38,148 nt of DNA from the NCBI GenBank assembly GCA_002269645.1, contig NIVC01000191.1, positions 1 through 38,148 on the forward strand. Direction: 5' to 3'. The position numbers and the translations under genes are program-made. Shown here one piece after another: positions 4,528-11,753 of this stretch (positions are counted from its first letter, which is position 1; every line of letters begins with the position of its first letter). The notes beneath the pieces are model-generated. The model saw only the letters and a program-made list of their open reading frames with translations. It ran no database searches and was not told where the DNA came from. Source of the DNA: Macrostomum lignano. Lineage: Eukaryota.

Positions 4528-7318
4528 ATGATTTCGTCAAGAAAACTAAATGCGAAATCGAGAAAAAGACAATCTGAAGTAGTACTGATGACTGGCCAAC
4601 GCGGAAGGCCAAGGATATTGCGAACGTCTAATGCGCCTAATGCATTGGAAAGTACTACATCGATTGCCACGGCTTCCTCGTGTTCCACAGTCACTGGCGG
4701 CAGTCTTTCACAAGATCTGGGTGCAGGAAACCATGACTCTATGCCTGAACAGATTAGTAATAAGTTTGAACAGCCGCCTAAATTCACGGAATGGGAAGAC
4801 TACACGGCCATTGTGGAAAGTTACACTGCCGGTTATAAACAGTCATTCGAGTTAAAATGCTGTGTTCGTTGCGACATGCAGCCTGGAGTTTTCCGATGCG
4901 TTCATTGTCAGTACGATGTCTGCAGTGATTGTAAAAAGATAACGCATGGAAATTTTGCTGCTCACAAGTTCCTCCAGTGGAATGTAAGTTGTTTTAAAAT
5001 CTAAATTGCAATTTCTAAGGATATTAGTTTACTGTGAAGAAAACAATGACGCCTATTTGGCAGTATAACGCTGTATTAAATTTGACGTGAAACAAAAGTA
5101 TTTAGAATGCTAATAGCCTTAGTACGGAATAATATTTTTATAACACCGCATACAAAATTTAACCCTTTTTCCTAGGCTCAATCGCTAATGTTTGAAGACA
5201 TTCAAGAAGAAGAGCCTGTCTCTCTATTCTGCTGTAGCGAATCAAGCTTGTCTTCTGAGTTTACAACATCATCCGAAATTCAGATTATTGACATCAACGG
5301 AATTGTTTGCGCCAGAATTTATACGTGCCAATCCTGTGATAAAGTTGATGCCATGCTAGCAAAAGGATACTTTCCTGGAAGCGAGTCACGCGTTGGCGAA
5401 TTGTTAACATTTTTTTCAATTAGCTTTCTATCAACTCTTGACTCCTTGTGCTTTGACGGTCAACTGCCACTGTCTCGTGCAATTACCTGTCTTTTCAAAG
5501 GCTCCGTCGTAGGACAAGGTCGCTGGAACCCTGGTTTAGCCGATCGAGTGTATCAGAGATTGCAGCGTAATGGAGTCCTACTGCGGTTTCGAGAGTTGCA
5601 GAGGTGTTCAGCAAGCTGGCCTGCTAGTTGTCTTTTGTGTCCTGACCAAAATTCAAGTCGGAAGTCTGTAGTTTGTGCTGATGCTCTATTTGGATGGCGA
5701 AGACTACAAAGTATGGGTTCGAAGCAACGTCTAGTGCCAGATTCTGAACGCTCATTGCCGTCACCGCTTATTCATGTAGAACCAGCAACTGTACCGCCTC
5801 CTACGACACAAGTGTCTGCAGAAGGCTGCACTAACTGGAAGGCTGGAACAGAAAAACCCGTGATCAGGGCCAGCAAGCACGATGTCAACGGTTTCTTTGG
5901 CTTATTTTGCCGGCATAACAGGCTTCTGACAGGTTGCAACATTATTACAGCTGGTGAGGGCCTGTGCTATCCAGAACAGACTCTTCGTCATTACCTAATG
6001 ACACAGCCCGTCTCAAAGGATCTCATTTTTATCTATGATGTTGGTGAGTTGATTTTTATCGTGTTTCTATCATGCTGCACTTATTTACACTATACACTTA
6101 TAGTGTGTGCTTACTTATGCTTGTGCTTACTTATGTACGTGCATGCGTACTGCGACACGAAGCTCAATTATTTATTCATTTAAAAACTTTTTCCTAAAAT
6201 CAGGTTGTCGCATTTCCAATCGTGTCAAGTCCATGGTGTCAGCATCTGGTGTACAGCTTAACAGTGTCACGTGCGCTGTGAACGCCTTTCATGTGCTGGG
6301 CCACGAGAGACAATGCCAACTAAAGTACTCCGTGCGGGTAACTCCTGGAGCGGGTCTTTGCGACGGGGAGAATACGGAGCGCGCTTGGTCTGCACTACGA
6401 CCGTTTGGTAAAAGCTTAAAGTACATGCGGTCCGATCGCAGAAGTGCTTGTATGTCTTACATTTTGCATTGCTTCAATGCTAATCAGTTGTTGTACGCCT
6501 CCAATTGGTTTTCTGCTCGATTAAAACTAATAACTCGCACAGCCGCGTCTTGTTCAGCTGAAATGGAGCAATTGCTTCTACAAGCTGGCGATTTGATGCG
6601 GAACAACAAATTAACTATTCCTGCCGGAATCTCTGAGGTAGCCATTTTAAATCTTGCTCAACAATGGCATGCAGAAGCCATAAATCCCAATAGCGACTCT
6701 CCATTGAGCAGGGAACCTTACGCAAAGCTTAAGGCACTTGCTTTGGAACGATTCTATTGGATCCGTCAGAGTGGCTGCTCAGATGGACAAAAAGAAAATC
6801 GAGCATGTCTACGCAAGGTTGCGGCTTTAAATGCAGACATTCGAATGGCCGCCCGCTCGCTTCCGCCAGGCCTTCGCGTGCCCACTATGATTCAGCTTCG
6901 CGACTTCCAGTCAGACTTCTACTTCGGTCTTTCGATCGATGTGTCTGAGAGGTTCAAGCGACGGGTGGTTGACTTGTATCACAAGCTGAATCGTCTAGCG
7001 GAGGAAAAGATCATTATTGTGCAAGAGTGGCGTGACGTTCAAATTAAACTTGAACAGCACTGTGAAACACTCCATCATCAACCTGGATTGCCAGCCCAGT
7101 TTCGATGCCTCTTTCAGACTATTTTAAAGCAACTTCAAGCTCTTCGCTTTGATCACATTGACGCAAGCATTGAAGCTGCTGCTGCTGATGCGCAGCATCC
7201 AAACGACGCTGGTACCAACGTAAATCAGCCAGATGACGTTGAAGCCCCGAGTCATTCAGACGTTGAATCAAGTCGTGAGCAGTCTGAGTCAGATGAAGAA
7301 TGGATTGATAGTATTTAA
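4528..7318 (+). CDS. CxC cysteine-cluster + KDZ (Kyakuja-Dileera-Zisupton) DDE transposase, three exons, 812 aa predicted
   Basis: Exons 4528-4983, 5176-6043, 6204-7318 (2439 nt, in frame; donors GTAAGT and GTGAGT, acceptors CCTAG and ATCAG). N-terminal CVRC..RCVHCQYDVCSDCKKITH..AHKFLQWN cluster. KDZ-type motifs CADALFGWRR, FCRH, GEGLCY, YDVGC (formed across intron 2), FHVLGH..CQ, GAGLCDGENTERAWS. Confidence 0.9.
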
Positions 7319-7481
7319 TTCCGAAACTCGATTACTTGAAACTGTTATCCATAGGATAATCATATTTCGGATGTAAACTAGCTTGTTTACATGAAATTCT
7401 AAACCAGTTTATAAACGTATACCGATTTCTCTTAGAAATTTACTGTAAAGTTTACAGCCTACCAAAGTAAGCAGTATTTCA

Positions 7482-7773
7482 GCTTTCAAAAAGCTGGCCG
7501 CTTTGCATTTCTTGCTGTGGCTTCCCGCTCTTAGTGGCGGGATTGATCCTTAGTTCAATGCTGCAAAAGACCGCTGTGCACTGTTTACTGTGCTGTGGAA
7601 TTTGTTTTGCTCTGCAAAGTGAACTATGGATTAACCCCCTGAACGGTGTTCGGCCTCTTCGTGGCTCAGGGGATCCACGATTCACTTTTAGAATCGGCTA
7701 ACTGAGCACCATTTTTTCTTGTTCATTTTTCTTTTATACTTCTGTTAACAATTTTAGATATTTGCTTCACTGA
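7482..7773 (+). repeat. 292-bp direct repeat, copy 1 (163 bp after the transposase stop)
   Basis: GCTTTCAAAAAGCTGGCCG...GATATTTGCTTCACTGA matches 11462-11753 (offset 3980); no differences found by eye. Confidence 0.97.
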
Positions 7774-9431: not shown

Positions 9432-11393
9432 ATGGACCCTGACCAGTTTATTTGCCCGATGTGTGACTATTCCACCAATCGGTCCGCCACCCTCCTTCGA
9501 CACGCTCGAAGCAAGCATACAGCAAACTACGATCGAGTCGAAGCCTACATTCTCTACAAACGTTGGCATGGCAAAAGAGATTTAAAGCTTTGCCAGCTGT
9601 GCAGCTCATTTGCCGCCTCTAATATGAGACAACACATGCGGCTGTGCCATTTCGGCGAAGCATTTGTTGTCGGCCGTGCAGCCGTAGCTGATGCGAGGGC
9701 AAGGGCATATGACAGAATTGAGGGCCTGCGGTTGTTGGCCTTTTACGGCATCCGGCCTCAACTAAATCTTAATCCAGCCTTGCCGCTTGAAAGCCTGCCG
9801 GAATCTGCCGCCGCTATAACAATGGACGCGGACTTAGCTACCGACGCTGAAATGGCGACCTCCAATGAGGTGTGTTAAACTAAAATTTGTGTCCATGGTT
9901 TTTTGTTGTTAAAACGCTGCGGCCTGTAACCTTGAAAGCATCAGGTCGCGGGTCAGGTCAGGTCGCAACTTTTCTTAAAAAGTTGAATGTTTGGTAAATT
10001 TGAGAAGATGAAAGTGAAAAATGAATAAATAAAAGCTTTTAGATACTTTGCTCAAAAGGAAATATTAGGGATTAACAACAAGGGGTGGGGTCTTTTATGC
10101 TGGCCCATGGTTTATGGTGTAGAGCAATTATCTTACCATCAGCTGGGTTGCATGTATGTTTAATGAAAATAACAAAGGGTTACGTTCATCTTTAATTGCA
10201 TGTTGTAACCATTATGATGTACTTTTTTCTTCACTGTCAGGTTCCCCTTAGCGTTCGGCTCCAAAGAGGAGAAGCCAATAAAGATGGCCTGTCCAATGAT
10301 CCGCCTTTCGAGCCGACTGTGACTTCGCCTGAGGACTCAAATAGCCACGCTGCTGCGGTTGCCCCTCCTGCAATGGCAGCTAATCGCGAGCTTCTGGTCC
10401 CGGAGTCTGCCGCTGCTGCAACTATAGACGTCGCCTTATCTACCGACGCTGTACCGGCGACCTCCAATGAAGTAAGTTGGTCAAACTAAATGAAGTCCAC
10501 AGTTTATTGTGTGAAACAGTGTTCTTAGGAACAATTTTGTTGCATGTTTATTCAATGCAAAGATTAAAGCGTTGGGGTTAATCTGCATTTGTATGCCGTT
10601 ACCACTATGAATCATTTGTCCTCTTCATTTTCTTCACTGTCAGGTTCCCCTTAGCGTTCGGCTCCAAAGAGGAGAAGCCAATAAAGATGGCCTGTCCAAT
10701 GATCCGCCTTTCGAGCCGACTGTGACTTCGCCTGAGGACTCAAATAGCCACGCTGCTGCGGTTGCCCCTCCTGCAATGGCAGCTAATCGCGAGCGTCTAG
10801 TCCCGGACACTATCACAACTCCGGACGGAGCATGCACGCCGCTCCTTCACGTGACGCCTCACGGCCGAGCTAGCCGTGGGAGTCCAGAGCGATCCCTGCC
10901 GACCGAAATGGCGTCTATGAGGCAACTCACTATGGCCGATGTGGTTCGACAGACAATGATTTCTACCGGCAACGTCGTGGTTCAGGCCGGTAGCGTCGAC
11001 GCAGAGGGTCTGGGGGCATTTGCCCGTACGGACCTCCCAAAAGGCACTGTCGTCTGTACTTACGGTGGAGAATTAATCCAAGGACAAAAAGCACGCCTCG
11101 CCCGGGAGGAAGATATTGTAAAGCAAGGGAAGCCATGCTGCTTCTTGTTTTTCTTTTCCTGGCGAGATCAAGCTTATTGCATCGACGCAACCAACACTTT
11201 CCAGTACGTCGGTCGGTACATTAACCATAGCCGGCGAAGAAATAACTTGAAGCCGATTGTTGCTGATGTAAACAATAAACCGCATCTGGTCTTCCAAGCC
11301 ATTCGAGACATTGCTCGAGGCGAGGAGCTACTCTACGATTATGGAGAAAGGCGCTCGGATGTGCTTCGACTGCATCCGTGGCTTAAAGACTGA
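9432..11393 (+). CDS. SETD8-like: Double C2H2 zinc finger fused to a PR-Set7/SETD8 (KMT5A)-like SET domain; three exons, 472 aa from ATG 9432
   Basis: Exons 9432-9869 (acceptor at 9354/9355, frame open upstream), 10241-10471 and 10644-11393, both junctions phase 0. Fingers CPMC..HARSKH and CQLC..SNMRQHMRLCH. SET motifs EGLGAFA, YGGELI, CFLFFF..YCIDAT, GRYINHS, PHLVFQAIRDIARGEELLYDYG, and a C-terminal HPWLKD matching the SETD8 family end. Confidence 0.88.
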
Positions 11394-11461
11394 AAGGCTA
11401 AGTTTATTCTCTGAAACCATCAGCCCCCGTTGCATGGGGAGTTCGCTATAAGATTTTATCG

Positions 11462-11753
11462 GCTTTCAAAAAGCTGGCCGCTTTGCATTTCTTGCTGTGG
11501 CTTCCCGCTCTTAGTGGCGGGATTGATCCTTAGTTCAATGCTGCAAAAGACCGCTGTGCACTGTTTACTGTGCTGTGGAATTTGTTTTGCTCTGCAAAGT
11601 GAACTATGGATTAACCCCCTGAACGGTGTTCGGCCTCTTCGTGGCTCAGGGGATCCACGATTCACTTTTAGAATCGGCTAACTGAGCACCATTTTTTCTT
11701 GTTCATTTTTCTTTTATACTTCTGTTAACAATTTTAGATATTTGCTTCACTGA
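11462..11753 (+). repeat. 292-bp direct repeat, copy 2 (68 bp after the SET stop)
   Basis: Matches 7482-7773. Confidence 0.97.

What the first reader, a model, noticed from the sequence alone, without database searches (positions are those of the whole stretch)
4528..11753. KDZ transposase physically linked to a zinc-finger + PR-Set7/SETD8-like histone methyltransferase: candidate chromatin-writer-carrying DNA transposon
Seen: an intact spliced CxC-KDZ transposase followed within about 1.1 kb, on the same strand, by a C2H2 ORF and a spliced C2H2-SET gene, with the same 292-bp sequence downstream of both the transposase and the SET gene. Established: fungal KDZ elements carry TET/JBP DNA-modifying genes and Zisupton elements carry SUMO-protease-type domains; SETD8/PR-Set7 makes H4K20me1. 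Inference: this is one mobile unit in which an animal KDZ element has captured an H4K20-type methyltransferase, possibly to mark its own chromatin or counter silencing. I do not know of this cargo being described for KDZ elements, but could not search.
Basis: partly seen in the sequence, partly recalled or inferred. Interest (0 to 1): 0.9.

Follow-up and report, generated by a model that had tools for sequence, protein, structure and literature searches.

The report
Flatworm KDZ transposon carrying SET methyltransferase
In the flatworm Macrostomum lignano, a large and very recently copied KDZ-type DNA transposon carries, beside its transposase, a zinc-finger protein fused to a PR-Set7/KMT5A-like histone methyltransferase, so the element appears to bring its own chromatin-marking enzyme.

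Summary
The window is Macrostomum lignano contig NIVC01000191.1. It encodes an intact 812-aa B-box/CxC/KDZ transposase, a 205-aa zinc-finger ORF and a spliced zinc-finger + KMT5A/SETD8-like SET gene. A 295-bp repeat (99.7% identical) lies after both the transposase and the SET gene.

The SET gene is not a single-copy host orthologue. Nine contigs hold the same KDZ-SET pair. A second family (transposase 48% identical) carries the same three genes. Both families start at a base-exact left end (5'-CAG...), with six unrelated flanks in total. That end is followed by a conserved terminal segment and the same 20/158-bp satellite. Copies are almost substitution-free.

It is at least 18 kb, and probably about 35 kb, because an inverted copy of the left terminus sits at 34890-34966. 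The 295-bp repeat is a module found after genes, not a boundary. Gene names in the public annotation imply one transcription unit.

Not shown: target-site duplications, a second right end, and any enzyme activity or target. SET genes are already known in HarbingerS and oomycete MuDR elements, so this is a new variant of a known kind.

The parts
1..1700 (+). Subterminal satellite array of the element: a 20-bp unit (GCGCCAATTTGAGCTTTCCA) in a 158/159-bp higher-order repeat. The contig starts inside the array.
   Evidence: TRF reports 24-1692. The same array follows the 423-bp left terminal segment in L003 and L004. A 77-80% identical array occupies the same position in family 2.
1701..4527 (+). 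AT-rich spacer between the satellite and the transposase gene. It is a presumed promoter or 5' region.
   Evidence: GC content is 23-39%. The region is collinear in all family-1 copies, with nested insertions in L004 (at 3187-3192) and L008 (at 2569).
4528..7318 (+). KDZ transposase gene with three exons (4528-4983, 5176-6043, 6204-7318). The 812-aa product has a B-box-like domain, a CxC cluster and the KDZ catalytic domain.
   Evidence: The model is identical to PAA88394.1. The acidic and CRH/NAFH motifs are invariant against fungal KDZ proteins.
7479..7773 (+). R295 copy 1, a 295-bp module that follows a gene. It starts 161 bp after the transposase stop codon.
   Evidence: It matches 11459-11753 at 99.7% and is kept in every family-1 copy. 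It has no Rfam or tRNA match. Its fold z-score is -3.9.
8452..9069 (+). ZNF ORF of 205 aa. It holds two C2H2-like fingers and is a paralogue of the N-terminus of the ZnF-SET protein.
   Evidence: Pairwise comparison with the ZnF-SET N-terminus gives 27% identity over 84 aa, E 5e-5. Family 2 has an intact counterpart (31% identity, E 9e-10). The ORF is intact in 5 of 6 other copies. It is not in the public protein set.
9355..11393 (+). ZnF-SET gene. The transcript starts right after the AG acceptor at 9353-9354. ATG is at 9432; exon A is 9432-9869; alternative exon B is 10241-10471; exon C is 10644-11393. The product has two C2H2-like fingers, a disordered linker and a KMT5A/SETD8-like SET domain.
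   Evidence: The annotated products are P0017 (A+B+C) and P0001 (A+C).
10225..10807 (+). Internal 180-bp tandem duplication (10225-10404 and 10628-10807) that created exon B with its own acceptor.
   Evidence: 98.9% identity. The acceptor contexts are identical.
11459..11753 (+). R295 copy 2, starting 66 bp after the SET stop codon.
13025..13601 (+). Annotated 98-aa acidic ORF (P0015). It shares the transcription-unit prefix Mlig004599 with the KDZ and SET genes.
   Evidence: It has no Pfam match.
15071..17331 (+). Internal tandem array (575-595-bp unit, 4 copies) followed by a (TATTC)n run. Copy number varies between copies of the element.
34890..34981 (-). Candidate right terminus. Positions 34890-34966 are an inverted copy of left-end positions 16-92 and carry three GGCTAGCC palindromes. 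Adding 15 nt, as at the left end, would put the terminus at 34981, ending in ...TG.
   Evidence: 45 bp match at 97.8% and 78 bp at 85.9% against the L003 and L004 left ends. GGCTAGCC occurs only three times in the whole window, all in this stretch. This terminus was seen in this one copy only.

Best explanation
The transposase, the ZNF ORF and the ZnF-SET gene form the coding core of a large, multi-copy, very recently amplified DNA transposon of the KDZ superfamily in Macrostomum lignano.

The proposed layout of the element is:
- a left end 5'-CAGAGCATATTCCCA, followed by three GGCTAGCC palindromes;
- a 423-bp terminal segment;
- a 20/158-bp satellite array;
- a spacer;
- KDZ transposase, R295, ZNF, ZnF-SET, R295, and a 98-aa ORF;
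- further tandem arrays;
- probably an imperfect inverted terminus at about 34.98 kb, giving a total of about 35 kb.

Shown here:
- The three genes travel together in two families that diverged long ago.
- Both families have base-exact left ends in unrelated flanks.
- The copies are nearly identical.
- The SET domain keeps the KMT5A fold and its catalytic motifs.

Inferred from the annotation's naming rule: the genes are transcribed as one unit and separated by splicing or trans-splicing.

Inferred mechanism (untested): the C2H2 fingers bring the KMT5A-like SET domain to DNA. The most economical targets are the element's own reiterated motifs (the 20-bp satellite unit or the GGCTAGCC termini). 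There it would mono-methylate H4K20 or another lysine. This would give the element a self-made chromatin state that either tempers host silencing or helps excision and repair.

The confidence of 0.7 applies to the structural claim (the SET gene is a resident accessory gene of a mobile KDZ element). The proposed function deserves about 0.3.
For: Source and linkage:
- The window is M. lignano contig NIVC01000191.1.
- KDZ and ZnF-SET proteins of the same 90% clusters lie on nine contigs with consecutive accessions. Seven loci were read.
- Their exons differ by 0-2 substitutions.

Second and third families:
- Family 2 (transposase 48% identical) has KDZ, then ZnF-SET, then ZNF.
- Its five copies show zero substitutions in the unique regions compared: the KDZ coding sequence, the 2.5-kb upstream spacer and, where present, the ZNF and ZnF-SET coding sequences and intergenic DNA.

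Left ends:
- Identity starts at exactly the same base, with unrelated DNA to the left, in L003 and L004 (family 1) and in L001, L012, L013 and L015 (family 2). Both families begin with CAG.
- The last ~250 bp of the terminal segment are 93% identical between families, and the satellite is 77-80% identical. The rest of the non-coding DNA does not align.

Extent and right end:
- Copies are collinear to at least 17.3 kb (L003, L004) and 24 kb (L010).
- An inverted copy of the left terminus lies at 34890-34966.

Transcription:
- Shared name prefixes (Mlig004599, Mlig022522, Mlig001681) are given to transcripts of one transcriptional-unit cluster, which is then cut at trans-splice and poly(A) sites (PMC5730564).
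- The SET coding sequence is annotated from 9357, just after an AG acceptor.
- An independent UniRef model fuses KDZ and SET into one 1347-aa protein.

SET domain and fingers:
- KMT5A is the best match by sequence and by fold. The Y...NHS...ELLYDYG...HPWLK motifs are kept.
- The first finger resembles DNA-binding CTCF fingers.
Against: - No target-site duplication could be checked, because no copy was seen with both flanks.
- The right end rests on one copy. It matches only left-end positions 16-92, not the outermost 15 nt.
- The Mlig_3_7 assembly is known to be redundant (PMC5730564). The nine contigs may therefore stand for fewer loci. Only two distinct family-1 left flanks were seen.
- A third KDZ family (33% identical) has no SET within 10 kb.
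- Two family-2 copies lie tail to tail without a matching target-site duplication.
- The ZNF ORF is not in the public protein set.
- Grouping of the three ZnF-SET proteins in a neighbour-joining tree has only 32% bootstrap support.
- The host's canonical KMT5A was not identified. It therefore cannot be excluded that the worm relies on these copies.
- Enzyme activity, substrate and DNA target are all untested.
Confidence: 0.7

Rival explanations
1. This is a non-mobile, segmentally duplicated host gene cluster. A domesticated KDZ-derived gene and a host ZnF-SET gene would have been copied with the extra large chromosome and as haplotigs of the DV1 line, not by transposition.
For: - All family-1 copies share more than 13-24 kb of collinear sequence.
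- The assembly has 180-312 Mb of duplicated blocks (PMC5730564).
- The genes passed the annotators' repeat filter.
- No target-site duplication was shown.
Against: - Six unrelated left flanks meet the repeat at the same base in each family. Segmental duplications or assembly mis-joins would not break at one nucleotide.
- There is a terminal inverted motif with three GGCTAGCC sites.
- Nine and at least six contigs per family exceed the expected ploidy redundancy.
- Family-2 copies in four different contexts have zero substitutions.
- The catalytic motifs of the transposase are intact.
Confidence: 0.12
2. The ZNF + ZnF-SET segment is a separate cassette bounded by the 295-bp direct repeats. It would have been inserted into, or be removable from, a KDZ element by recombination. 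It would then be a secondary passenger and not an integral accessory gene.
For: - R295 flanks ZNF + ZnF-SET in family 1.
- In family 2 a 591-bp repeat flanks ZnF-SET alone. Copy L012 lacks exactly one repeat plus ZnF-SET.
- Gene order differs between the families.
Against: - Family 2 has a third repeat copy after its ZNF gene. The repeat therefore follows every gene, like a shared 3' or intercistronic module.
- The cassette was never seen away from KDZ. The exhaustive protein search finds the ZnF-SET architecture only in these loci and in one unplaced contig.
- The L012 deletion is what homologous recombination between any two direct repeats would produce.
Confidence: 0.1
3. The SET gene is the host's ordinary PR-Set7/KMT5A orthologue, and a KDZ element happens to lie beside it.
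For: The SET domain is closest to KMT5A. No other M. lignano KMT5A turned up in the indexed search.
Against: - The pair is multi-copy and always linked and recurs in a diverged family.
- The N-terminus is a C2H2 pair that canonical KMT5A proteins in the hit list lack.
- The domain falls outside the flatworm KMT5A group in the tree, though with weak support.
Confidence: 0.03

Closest known systems
Fungal KDZ (Kyakuja/Dileera/Zisupton) transposons carrying TET/JBP dioxygenases (Iyer et al. 2014; Kojima 2025, PMC12730594)
   Same: - Same transposase superfamily (PF18758, with an N-terminal cysteine cluster).
- A DNA or chromatin-modifying enzyme gene rides beside the transposase.
- Kyakuja has 5'-CA..TG-3' termini. 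Here both families start with CAG.
   Different: - The cargo here is a KMT5A-like SET domain fused to C2H2 fingers, not TET/JBP.
- The host is an animal (a flatworm).
- The element is much longer and has a subterminal satellite.
- Kyakuja is reported without terminal inverted repeats. Here a ~78-bp imperfect inverted terminus is seen.
- The 7-8-bp target-site duplication was not testable.
SET-carrying DNA transposons: HarbingerS and Phytophthora MuDR families (Repbase Reports 2014, cited in PMC12730594)
   Same: [quoted passage not shown] This is the same concept of an element that brings its own chromatin writer.
   Different: - The transposase superfamilies differ (PIF/Harbinger and Mutator).
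- The SET type and hosts differ or are not documented in the text I could read.
- No zinc-finger fusion is reported there.
Cryptococcus KDZ1-3 and KDZx1 (bioRxiv 10.1101/2024.08.15.608186)
   Same: These are experimentally mobile KDZ elements, described as 'gigantic', that carry extra ORFs besides the CxC-KDZ transposase.
   Different: - They are 6.4-10.9 kb, with terminal inverted repeats or 8-bp target-site duplications.
- Their extra ORFs have no recognised domains.
- The present element is at least 18 kb, probably about 35 kb, and its extra ORFs are recognisable.
KMT5A / SETD8 / PR-Set7 (H4K20 mono-methyltransferase)
   Same: - Best match by sequence (E 3.7e-27) and by fold (target TM 0.85-0.87).
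- The catalytic Tyr, NHS and ELLYDYG motifs and the C-terminal HPWLK are kept.
   Different: - The gene is multi-copy and linked to a transposon.
- The N-terminus is replaced by two C2H2-like fingers and a disordered linker.
- Identity is only 32-35%.
- Substrate specificity is untested.
SETMAR (primate SET-mariner fusion)
   Same: A SET domain and a transposase are physically associated.
   Different: SETMAR is a single host gene that captured a dead mariner transposase. Here an apparently active transposon carries a separate SET gene.

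Membership tests
KDZ superfamily DNA transposon | Transposase with the KDZ catalytic domain (PF18758) | tested here: met
   118.7 bits, E 4e-34, covering profile positions 4-212 of 217 (scored on P0010, a sister copy from the same 90% cluster as the window's protein). The D/D/E-type acidic residues and the CRH and NAFH..H..CQ motifs are invariant against fungal KDZ proteins.
KDZ superfamily DNA transposon | N-terminal CxC cysteine cluster | tested here: inconclusive
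   CxC1 gives E 0.009-0.019, and CxC2 gives E 0.001 in the third family. All are below Pfam's thresholds. The cysteine pattern is conserved among the three flatworm families.
KDZ superfamily DNA transposon | Defined termini shared by copies inserted at different sites | tested here: met
   The left end is base-exact in 2 (family 1) and 4 (family 2) unrelated flanks. The right end was seen once, as an inverted copy of the left terminus.
KDZ superfamily DNA transposon | Target-site duplication of 7 bp (Kyakuja) or 8 bp (Zisupton, Dileera) | not testable with these tools
   No copy could be fetched with both flanks, because flanks are limited to 10 kb and the window starts inside the element. The outer flanks of the convergent pair L012/L001 do not match.
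KDZ superfamily DNA transposon | Assignment to the Kyakuja, Dileera or Zisupton clade | not tested
   No reference set of the three clades was available. Only a CAG start like Kyakuja's CA..TG was noted.
KMT5A/SETD8/PR-Set7 family | SET domain closest to KMT5A in sequence and fold | tested here: met
   The top PDB sequence hits are KMT5A (E 3.7e-27), against CpSET8 at 3e-17 and EZH2 at 2e-13. The top 19 Foldseek hits are SETD8.
KMT5A/SETD8/PR-Set7 family | Catalytic motifs (Tyr of the EYxG strand, NHS, ELxYDYG) and the C-terminal HPWLK flank | tested here: met
   The alignment to 5teg/4ij8 shows vctYgGeli, gryiNHS, eeLLYDYGer and HPWLK. These positions are invariant columns in the 20-sequence alignment.
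KMT5A/SETD8/PR-Set7 family | Orthology: a single conserved host locus with the KMT5A N-terminal region | tested here: not met
   The gene is on nine contigs plus a diverged family, always next to KDZ. The N-terminus is a C2H2 pair. It lies outside the flatworm KMT5A cluster in the neighbour-joining tree, with weak support.
KMT5A/SETD8/PR-Set7 family | H4K20 mono-methylation activity | not testable with these tools
   This needs a biochemical assay.
Transposons carrying chromatin or DNA-modifier cargo (KDZ-TET/JBP, HarbingerS-SET, MuDR-SET) | The modifier gene lies inside the element's termini and is kept across diverged families | tested here: met
   It lies between the left end and the region collinear in all copies. 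It is conserved between families whose transposases are 48% identical.

The most novel reading that the evidence does not exclude
The element encodes a complete self-targeting chromatin system. The ZNF and ZnF-SET proteins would recognise the element's own reiterated DNA (the 20-bp GGCGCC-containing satellite unit and/or the GGCTAGCC termini). They would lay down H4K20 methylation over a multi-kilobase array that the transposon carries with it. Each insertion would thus seed a new chromatin domain, for example to shield the element from piRNA or heterochromatin silencing, or to recruit 53BP1-type repair at excision sites. This would be an animal transposon that builds its own epigenetic environment.
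Probability: 0.15. Interest if true: 0.85.

Novelty: new variant of a known kind. Interest (0 to 1): 0.65.

Why it matters
Transposons that carry enzymes acting on DNA or chromatin marks are direct evidence of an epigenetic arms race. Examples include TET/JBP in fungal KDZ and other elements, and SET in HarbingerS and oomycete MuDR. Those I found are in fungi and oomycetes, plus plant VANDAL elements that encode an anti-silencing regulator, and the SET cases are documented mainly in Repbase Reports.

This case is different in several useful ways:
- The host is an animal in which RNAi and transgenesis work.
- The copies are nearly identical, which suggests the element is still active.
- The cargo is a DNA-targeted KMT5A-type methyltransferase.
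- The element carries kilobases of its own satellite.
- Its genes seem to be expressed as one trans-spliced unit.

The system would make it possible to test in vivo what a transposon gains from writing a histone mark. It would also extend the known size and gene content of KDZ elements well beyond the 6-11 kb fungal ones. In addition, it flags about thirty 'hypothetical protein' genes in the M. lignano annotation as transposon genes.

Tried and rejected
- Right end and target-site duplication. I tried to reach the right flank of other copies. Look-ups are limited to 10-kb flanks and to annotated proteins. Ten ATG-to-stop ORFs from 22.8-36.4 kb, and the ZNF ORF, are not in the protein collection.
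- Selection test. dN/dS within families was impossible, because family-2 copies have zero substitutions and family-1 copies have 0-2. Between families the sites are saturated.
- Nature of R295. It has no Rfam family and no tRNA, and the bacterial-type promoter/terminator scan is uninformative. It folds better than shuffled sequences (z = -3.9), which alone proves nothing. I rejected the LTR reading because there is no retro-element content and because family 2 has three copies of its own repeat. Similarity between the family-1 and family-2 repeats is weak: a few shared motifs such as CTTTTATACT.
- The conserved 247-bp terminal segment has no credible Rfam match.
- A single palindromic family-2 element made of L012 + L001 was considered. 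It was not adopted because the outer flanks give no target-site duplication.
- Family-2 termini were searched for inverted copies within 10 kb, and none was found.
- Canonical M. lignano KMT5A. It did not appear in the indexed search. The exhaustive search has no names, so the host paralogue remains unidentified.
- Wider distribution. The ZnF-SET architecture was found only in one unplaced Logan contig (SRR19430222, 30% identity, single exon, no neighbours).
- Literature. Searches for KDZ + SET, for transposon + KMT5A, and for Zisupton + Macrostomum gave no prior description.

Full report
**Source.** The window is Macrostomum lignano (free-living flatworm), Mlig_3_7 contig NIVC01000191.1, positions 1-38148. 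Locus L005, fetched through the annotated transposase, is 100% identical over 1-17318 with the same gene coordinates. The two genes are annotated as hypothetical proteins BOX15_Mlig004599g6 (PAA88394.1) and g8 (PAA88395.1).

**Observation check: transposase and zinc-finger ORF.**
- Reading the DNA gives a three-exon transposase gene (4528-4983, 5176-6043, 6204-7318) with canonical GT..AG introns.
- Its 812-aa product equals the annotated protein exactly.
- The spliced protein P0010 of a near-identical sister copy matches Pfam KDZ over almost the whole profile (118.7 bits, E 4e-34).
- B-box and CxC1 hits are sub-threshold.
- The acidic residues and the CRH and NAFH..H..CQ motifs are invariant against fungal KDZ proteins.
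- The 205-aa ZNF ORF (8452-9069) follows 1134 bp downstream.

**Observation check: ZnF-SET gene and repeat.**
- The ZnF-SET gene has exon A (ATG 9432 to 9869), exon B (10241-10471) and exon C (10644-11393).
- B and the start of C are a 180-bp tandem duplication.
- Both A+B+C and A+C products are in the public annotation.
- The SET domain scores 72.9 bits on PF00856.
- Its best solved relatives are all human KMT5A/SETD8 (E 3.7e-27).
- The motifs ..Y.G.., NHS, ELLYDYG and HPWLK are kept.
- An AlphaFold model (SET pLDDT 84-97) hits SETD8 in the first 19 Foldseek places.
- The repeat is 295 bp with one mismatch.

**Is the SET gene a chance neighbour or the host orthologue? No.**
- The 90%-identity clusters of the transposase and of the ZnF-SET protein each sit on nine contigs. 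Their accession numbers are consecutive, so the genes are adjacent.
- I read seven such loci. All have KDZ, R295, ZNF, ZnF-SET and R295 in the same order. Exons differ by 0-2 substitutions, and the rest of the differences are single-base gaps typical of this assembly.
- A second family, whose transposase is only 48% identical (Mlig001681), has a ZnF-SET gene 0.7 kb downstream of KDZ. That gene has the same architecture and is 33-40% identical. A ZNF ORF (31% identical) follows it.
- A third KDZ family (33% identical) has no SET within 10 kb.

**Is it mobile, and how big is it?**
The collinear region runs from the satellite at the window's start to at least 17.3 kb (L003, L004), and to 24.0 kb in L010. 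Each of these limits is set by the fetch size.
- On the left, L003 and L004 are 100% identical from CAGAGCATATTCCCAGGCTAGCC... onward and unrelated before it. This end lies 423 bp upstream of the satellite.
- Family 2 shows the same pattern. Four copies (L001, L012, L013, L015) become identical at CAGTTTATGGCCGCCCGTTAGCGG..., 385 bp before the same kind of satellite, with four unrelated flanks.
- The last ~250 bp of the terminal segment are 93% identical between the families and the satellite is 77-80% identical. Otherwise only short KDZ-coding stretches (69-73% identity) and two short repeat segments far downstream align.
- Family-2 copies have zero substitutions across the unique regions compared: the KDZ coding sequence, the 2.5-kb spacer and, where present, the ZNF/ZnF-SET coding sequences and intergenic DNA.
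- A base-exact boundary in six different contexts, together with near-identity, is what recent transposition gives. Segmental duplication or assembly mis-joins would not produce it.

**Right end.**
- In the window, an inverted copy of left-end positions 16-92 lies at 34890-34966 (45 bp at 98%, 78 bp at 86%).
- It contains the only three GGCTAGCC octamers in the 38 kb.
- If the same 15-nt offset applies as on the left, the element ends at 34981 in ...TG. That would give 5'-CA...TG-3', as reported for Kyakuja (PMC12730594).
- This would make the element about 35 kb long.
- I could not verify this end in a second copy, nor test target-site duplications.

**The 295-bp repeat.**
- It is not a boundary.
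- Family 2 has its own repeat (591 bp, 97%) after KDZ and after ZnF-SET, and a third 250-bp copy after ZNF.
- Copy L012 has lost exactly one repeat plus ZnF-SET, as expected from recombination between the repeats.
- A repeat that follows each gene is best read as a shared 3' or intercistronic module.
- It matches no Rfam family or tRNA.

**Transcription.**
- In the Mlig_3_7 annotation, transcripts of one transcriptional-unit cluster share a name prefix. These units are often polycistronic precursors, which were cut at experimentally mapped trans-splice and poly(A) sites (PMC5730564).
- KDZ, ZnF-SET and the 98-aa ORF share the prefixes Mlig004599 and Mlig022522 in family 1. KDZ and ZnF-SET share Mlig001681 in family 2.
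- The SET coding sequence is annotated as 5'-partial from 9357, two bases after an AG acceptor.
- An independent UniRef model splices KDZ directly to that acceptor.
- Co-transcription is thus inferred from the annotation. I did not see it in reads.

**What the cargo is.**
- The SET domain is KMT5A-like but not the canonical orthologue.
- An exhaustive HMMER scan of 1.84 billion representatives finds 2829 SET relatives. Besides the window's own protein cluster (P0001) and an M. lignano fragment (P0049), only the family-2 protein and one unplaced Logan contig match both the finger region and the SET region.
- In a neighbour-joining tree the three ZnF-SET proteins group outside the flatworm and other animal KMT5A sequences, but with only 32% bootstrap support.
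- The first finger resembles DNA-binding C2H2 fingers of CTCF (E 1e-6).
- The ZNF ORF is a paralogue of this finger module.

**Mechanism (inference).** A DNA-binding finger pair tethered by a disordered linker to a KMT5A-type catalytic domain suggests sequence-directed lysine methylation, most simply H4K20me1. The element itself offers kilobases of reiterated candidate sites: the 20-bp GGCGCC-containing unit and the GGCTAGCC termini. The mark might blunt silencing, self-limit the element, or aid repair after excision. None of these could be decided here.

**Comparison with the literature.**
- KDZ elements carrying TET/JBP are known in fungi.
- SET genes are known in HarbingerS and in Phytophthora MuDR (PMC12730594).
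- Mobile Cryptococcus KDZ elements of 6-11 kb carry extra ORFs without recognised domains.
- I found no report of a KDZ element with a SET gene, of a transposon-borne KMT5A-type SET, or of KDZ elements in Macrostomum. Repbase itself could not be searched.
- This is therefore a new variant of a known kind.

**Limits.**
- There is no target-site duplication, and only one right end was seen.
- The assembly is redundant.
- The host KMT5A was not identified.
- There are no expression reads and no biochemistry.

Noticed in passing
L008 1-8032 (junction at window 2569): In copy L008 the KDZ element is interrupted at window-equivalent 2569 by at least 8 kb of unrelated DNA. That DNA encodes a PHD-finger ORF and a MULE transposase (PF10551, E 7e-14). 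It is probably a nested Mutator-like insertion.
   Followed up: partly
L004 5330-8659 (window 3187-3192): Copy L004 has a 3.3-kb insertion in the AT-rich spacer. Its ORFs have no Pfam match.
   Followed up: partly
window 17545-18672: This 1.1-kb stretch is present in the window but absent from copies L006 and L010. It is an insertion/deletion polymorphism between copies of the element.
   Followed up: no
L012 16363-22480 and L001 17121-22512 (contig NIVC01001431.1): Two family-2 copies lie tail to tail on one contig. They meet in inverted 387-bp tandem arrays around a 200-bp centre. L013, on another contig, shows the same centre. This is either a palindromic higher-order structure or an assembly artefact.
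   Followed up: partly
window 26272-26361: A solitary ~90-bp piece of the element's satellite lies 24 kb from the array. Its first 78 bp are 100% identical to the first satellite unit next to the left terminal segment in L004. Nearby, 28566-28722 and the 21-bp array at 30585-31263 resemble sequences downstream of the family-2 genes.
   Followed up: partly
window 32187-34097: A ~1.15-kb tandem duplication at 100% identity (32187-32486 with 33333-33632, and 32670-32952 with 33815-34097).
   Followed up: no
window 18972-22574: About 1 kb of a strongly strand-skewed, G/A-rich 28-bp repeat, followed by about 2 kb of degenerate (TGTC)n. Both are shared by the other copies. They create long spurious ORFs.
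   Followed up: no
P0039 (Logan contig, 238 aa): A protein that fuses a Ulp1-type protease domain (PF02902, typical of transposon proteins) to a KMT5A-like SET domain. It may be another transposon-borne KMT5A-type SET in an unidentified organism.
   Followed up: no
L016 (Logan SRR33465455 contig, 51 kb): The closest SET-only relative (P0072, 46% identity) sits in a gene-dense contig with Evr1/Alr and HARE-HTH genes. The contig looks like a giant virus, not a cellular genome.
   Followed up: no
P0070 (Phyllopteryx taeniolatus, 4152 aa) and P0071 (Holothuria leucospilota, 799 aa): These proteins match the window's KMT5A-like SET region in five to eight stretches, which suggests repeated SET domains.
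   Followed up: no
L001 16683-17092: A reverse-transcriptase-like ORF fragment (..NGFRPRRGT..) lies just downstream of the family-2 ZNF gene.
   Followed up: no
window 35921-36923, minus strand: Three consecutive overlapping ORFs in different frames (MYSEESLRQLEDD..., ...RRRIMEYGR, MNQPRPRP...) look like one flanking gene broken by frameshifts or introns. They have no Pfam match.
   Followed up: partly
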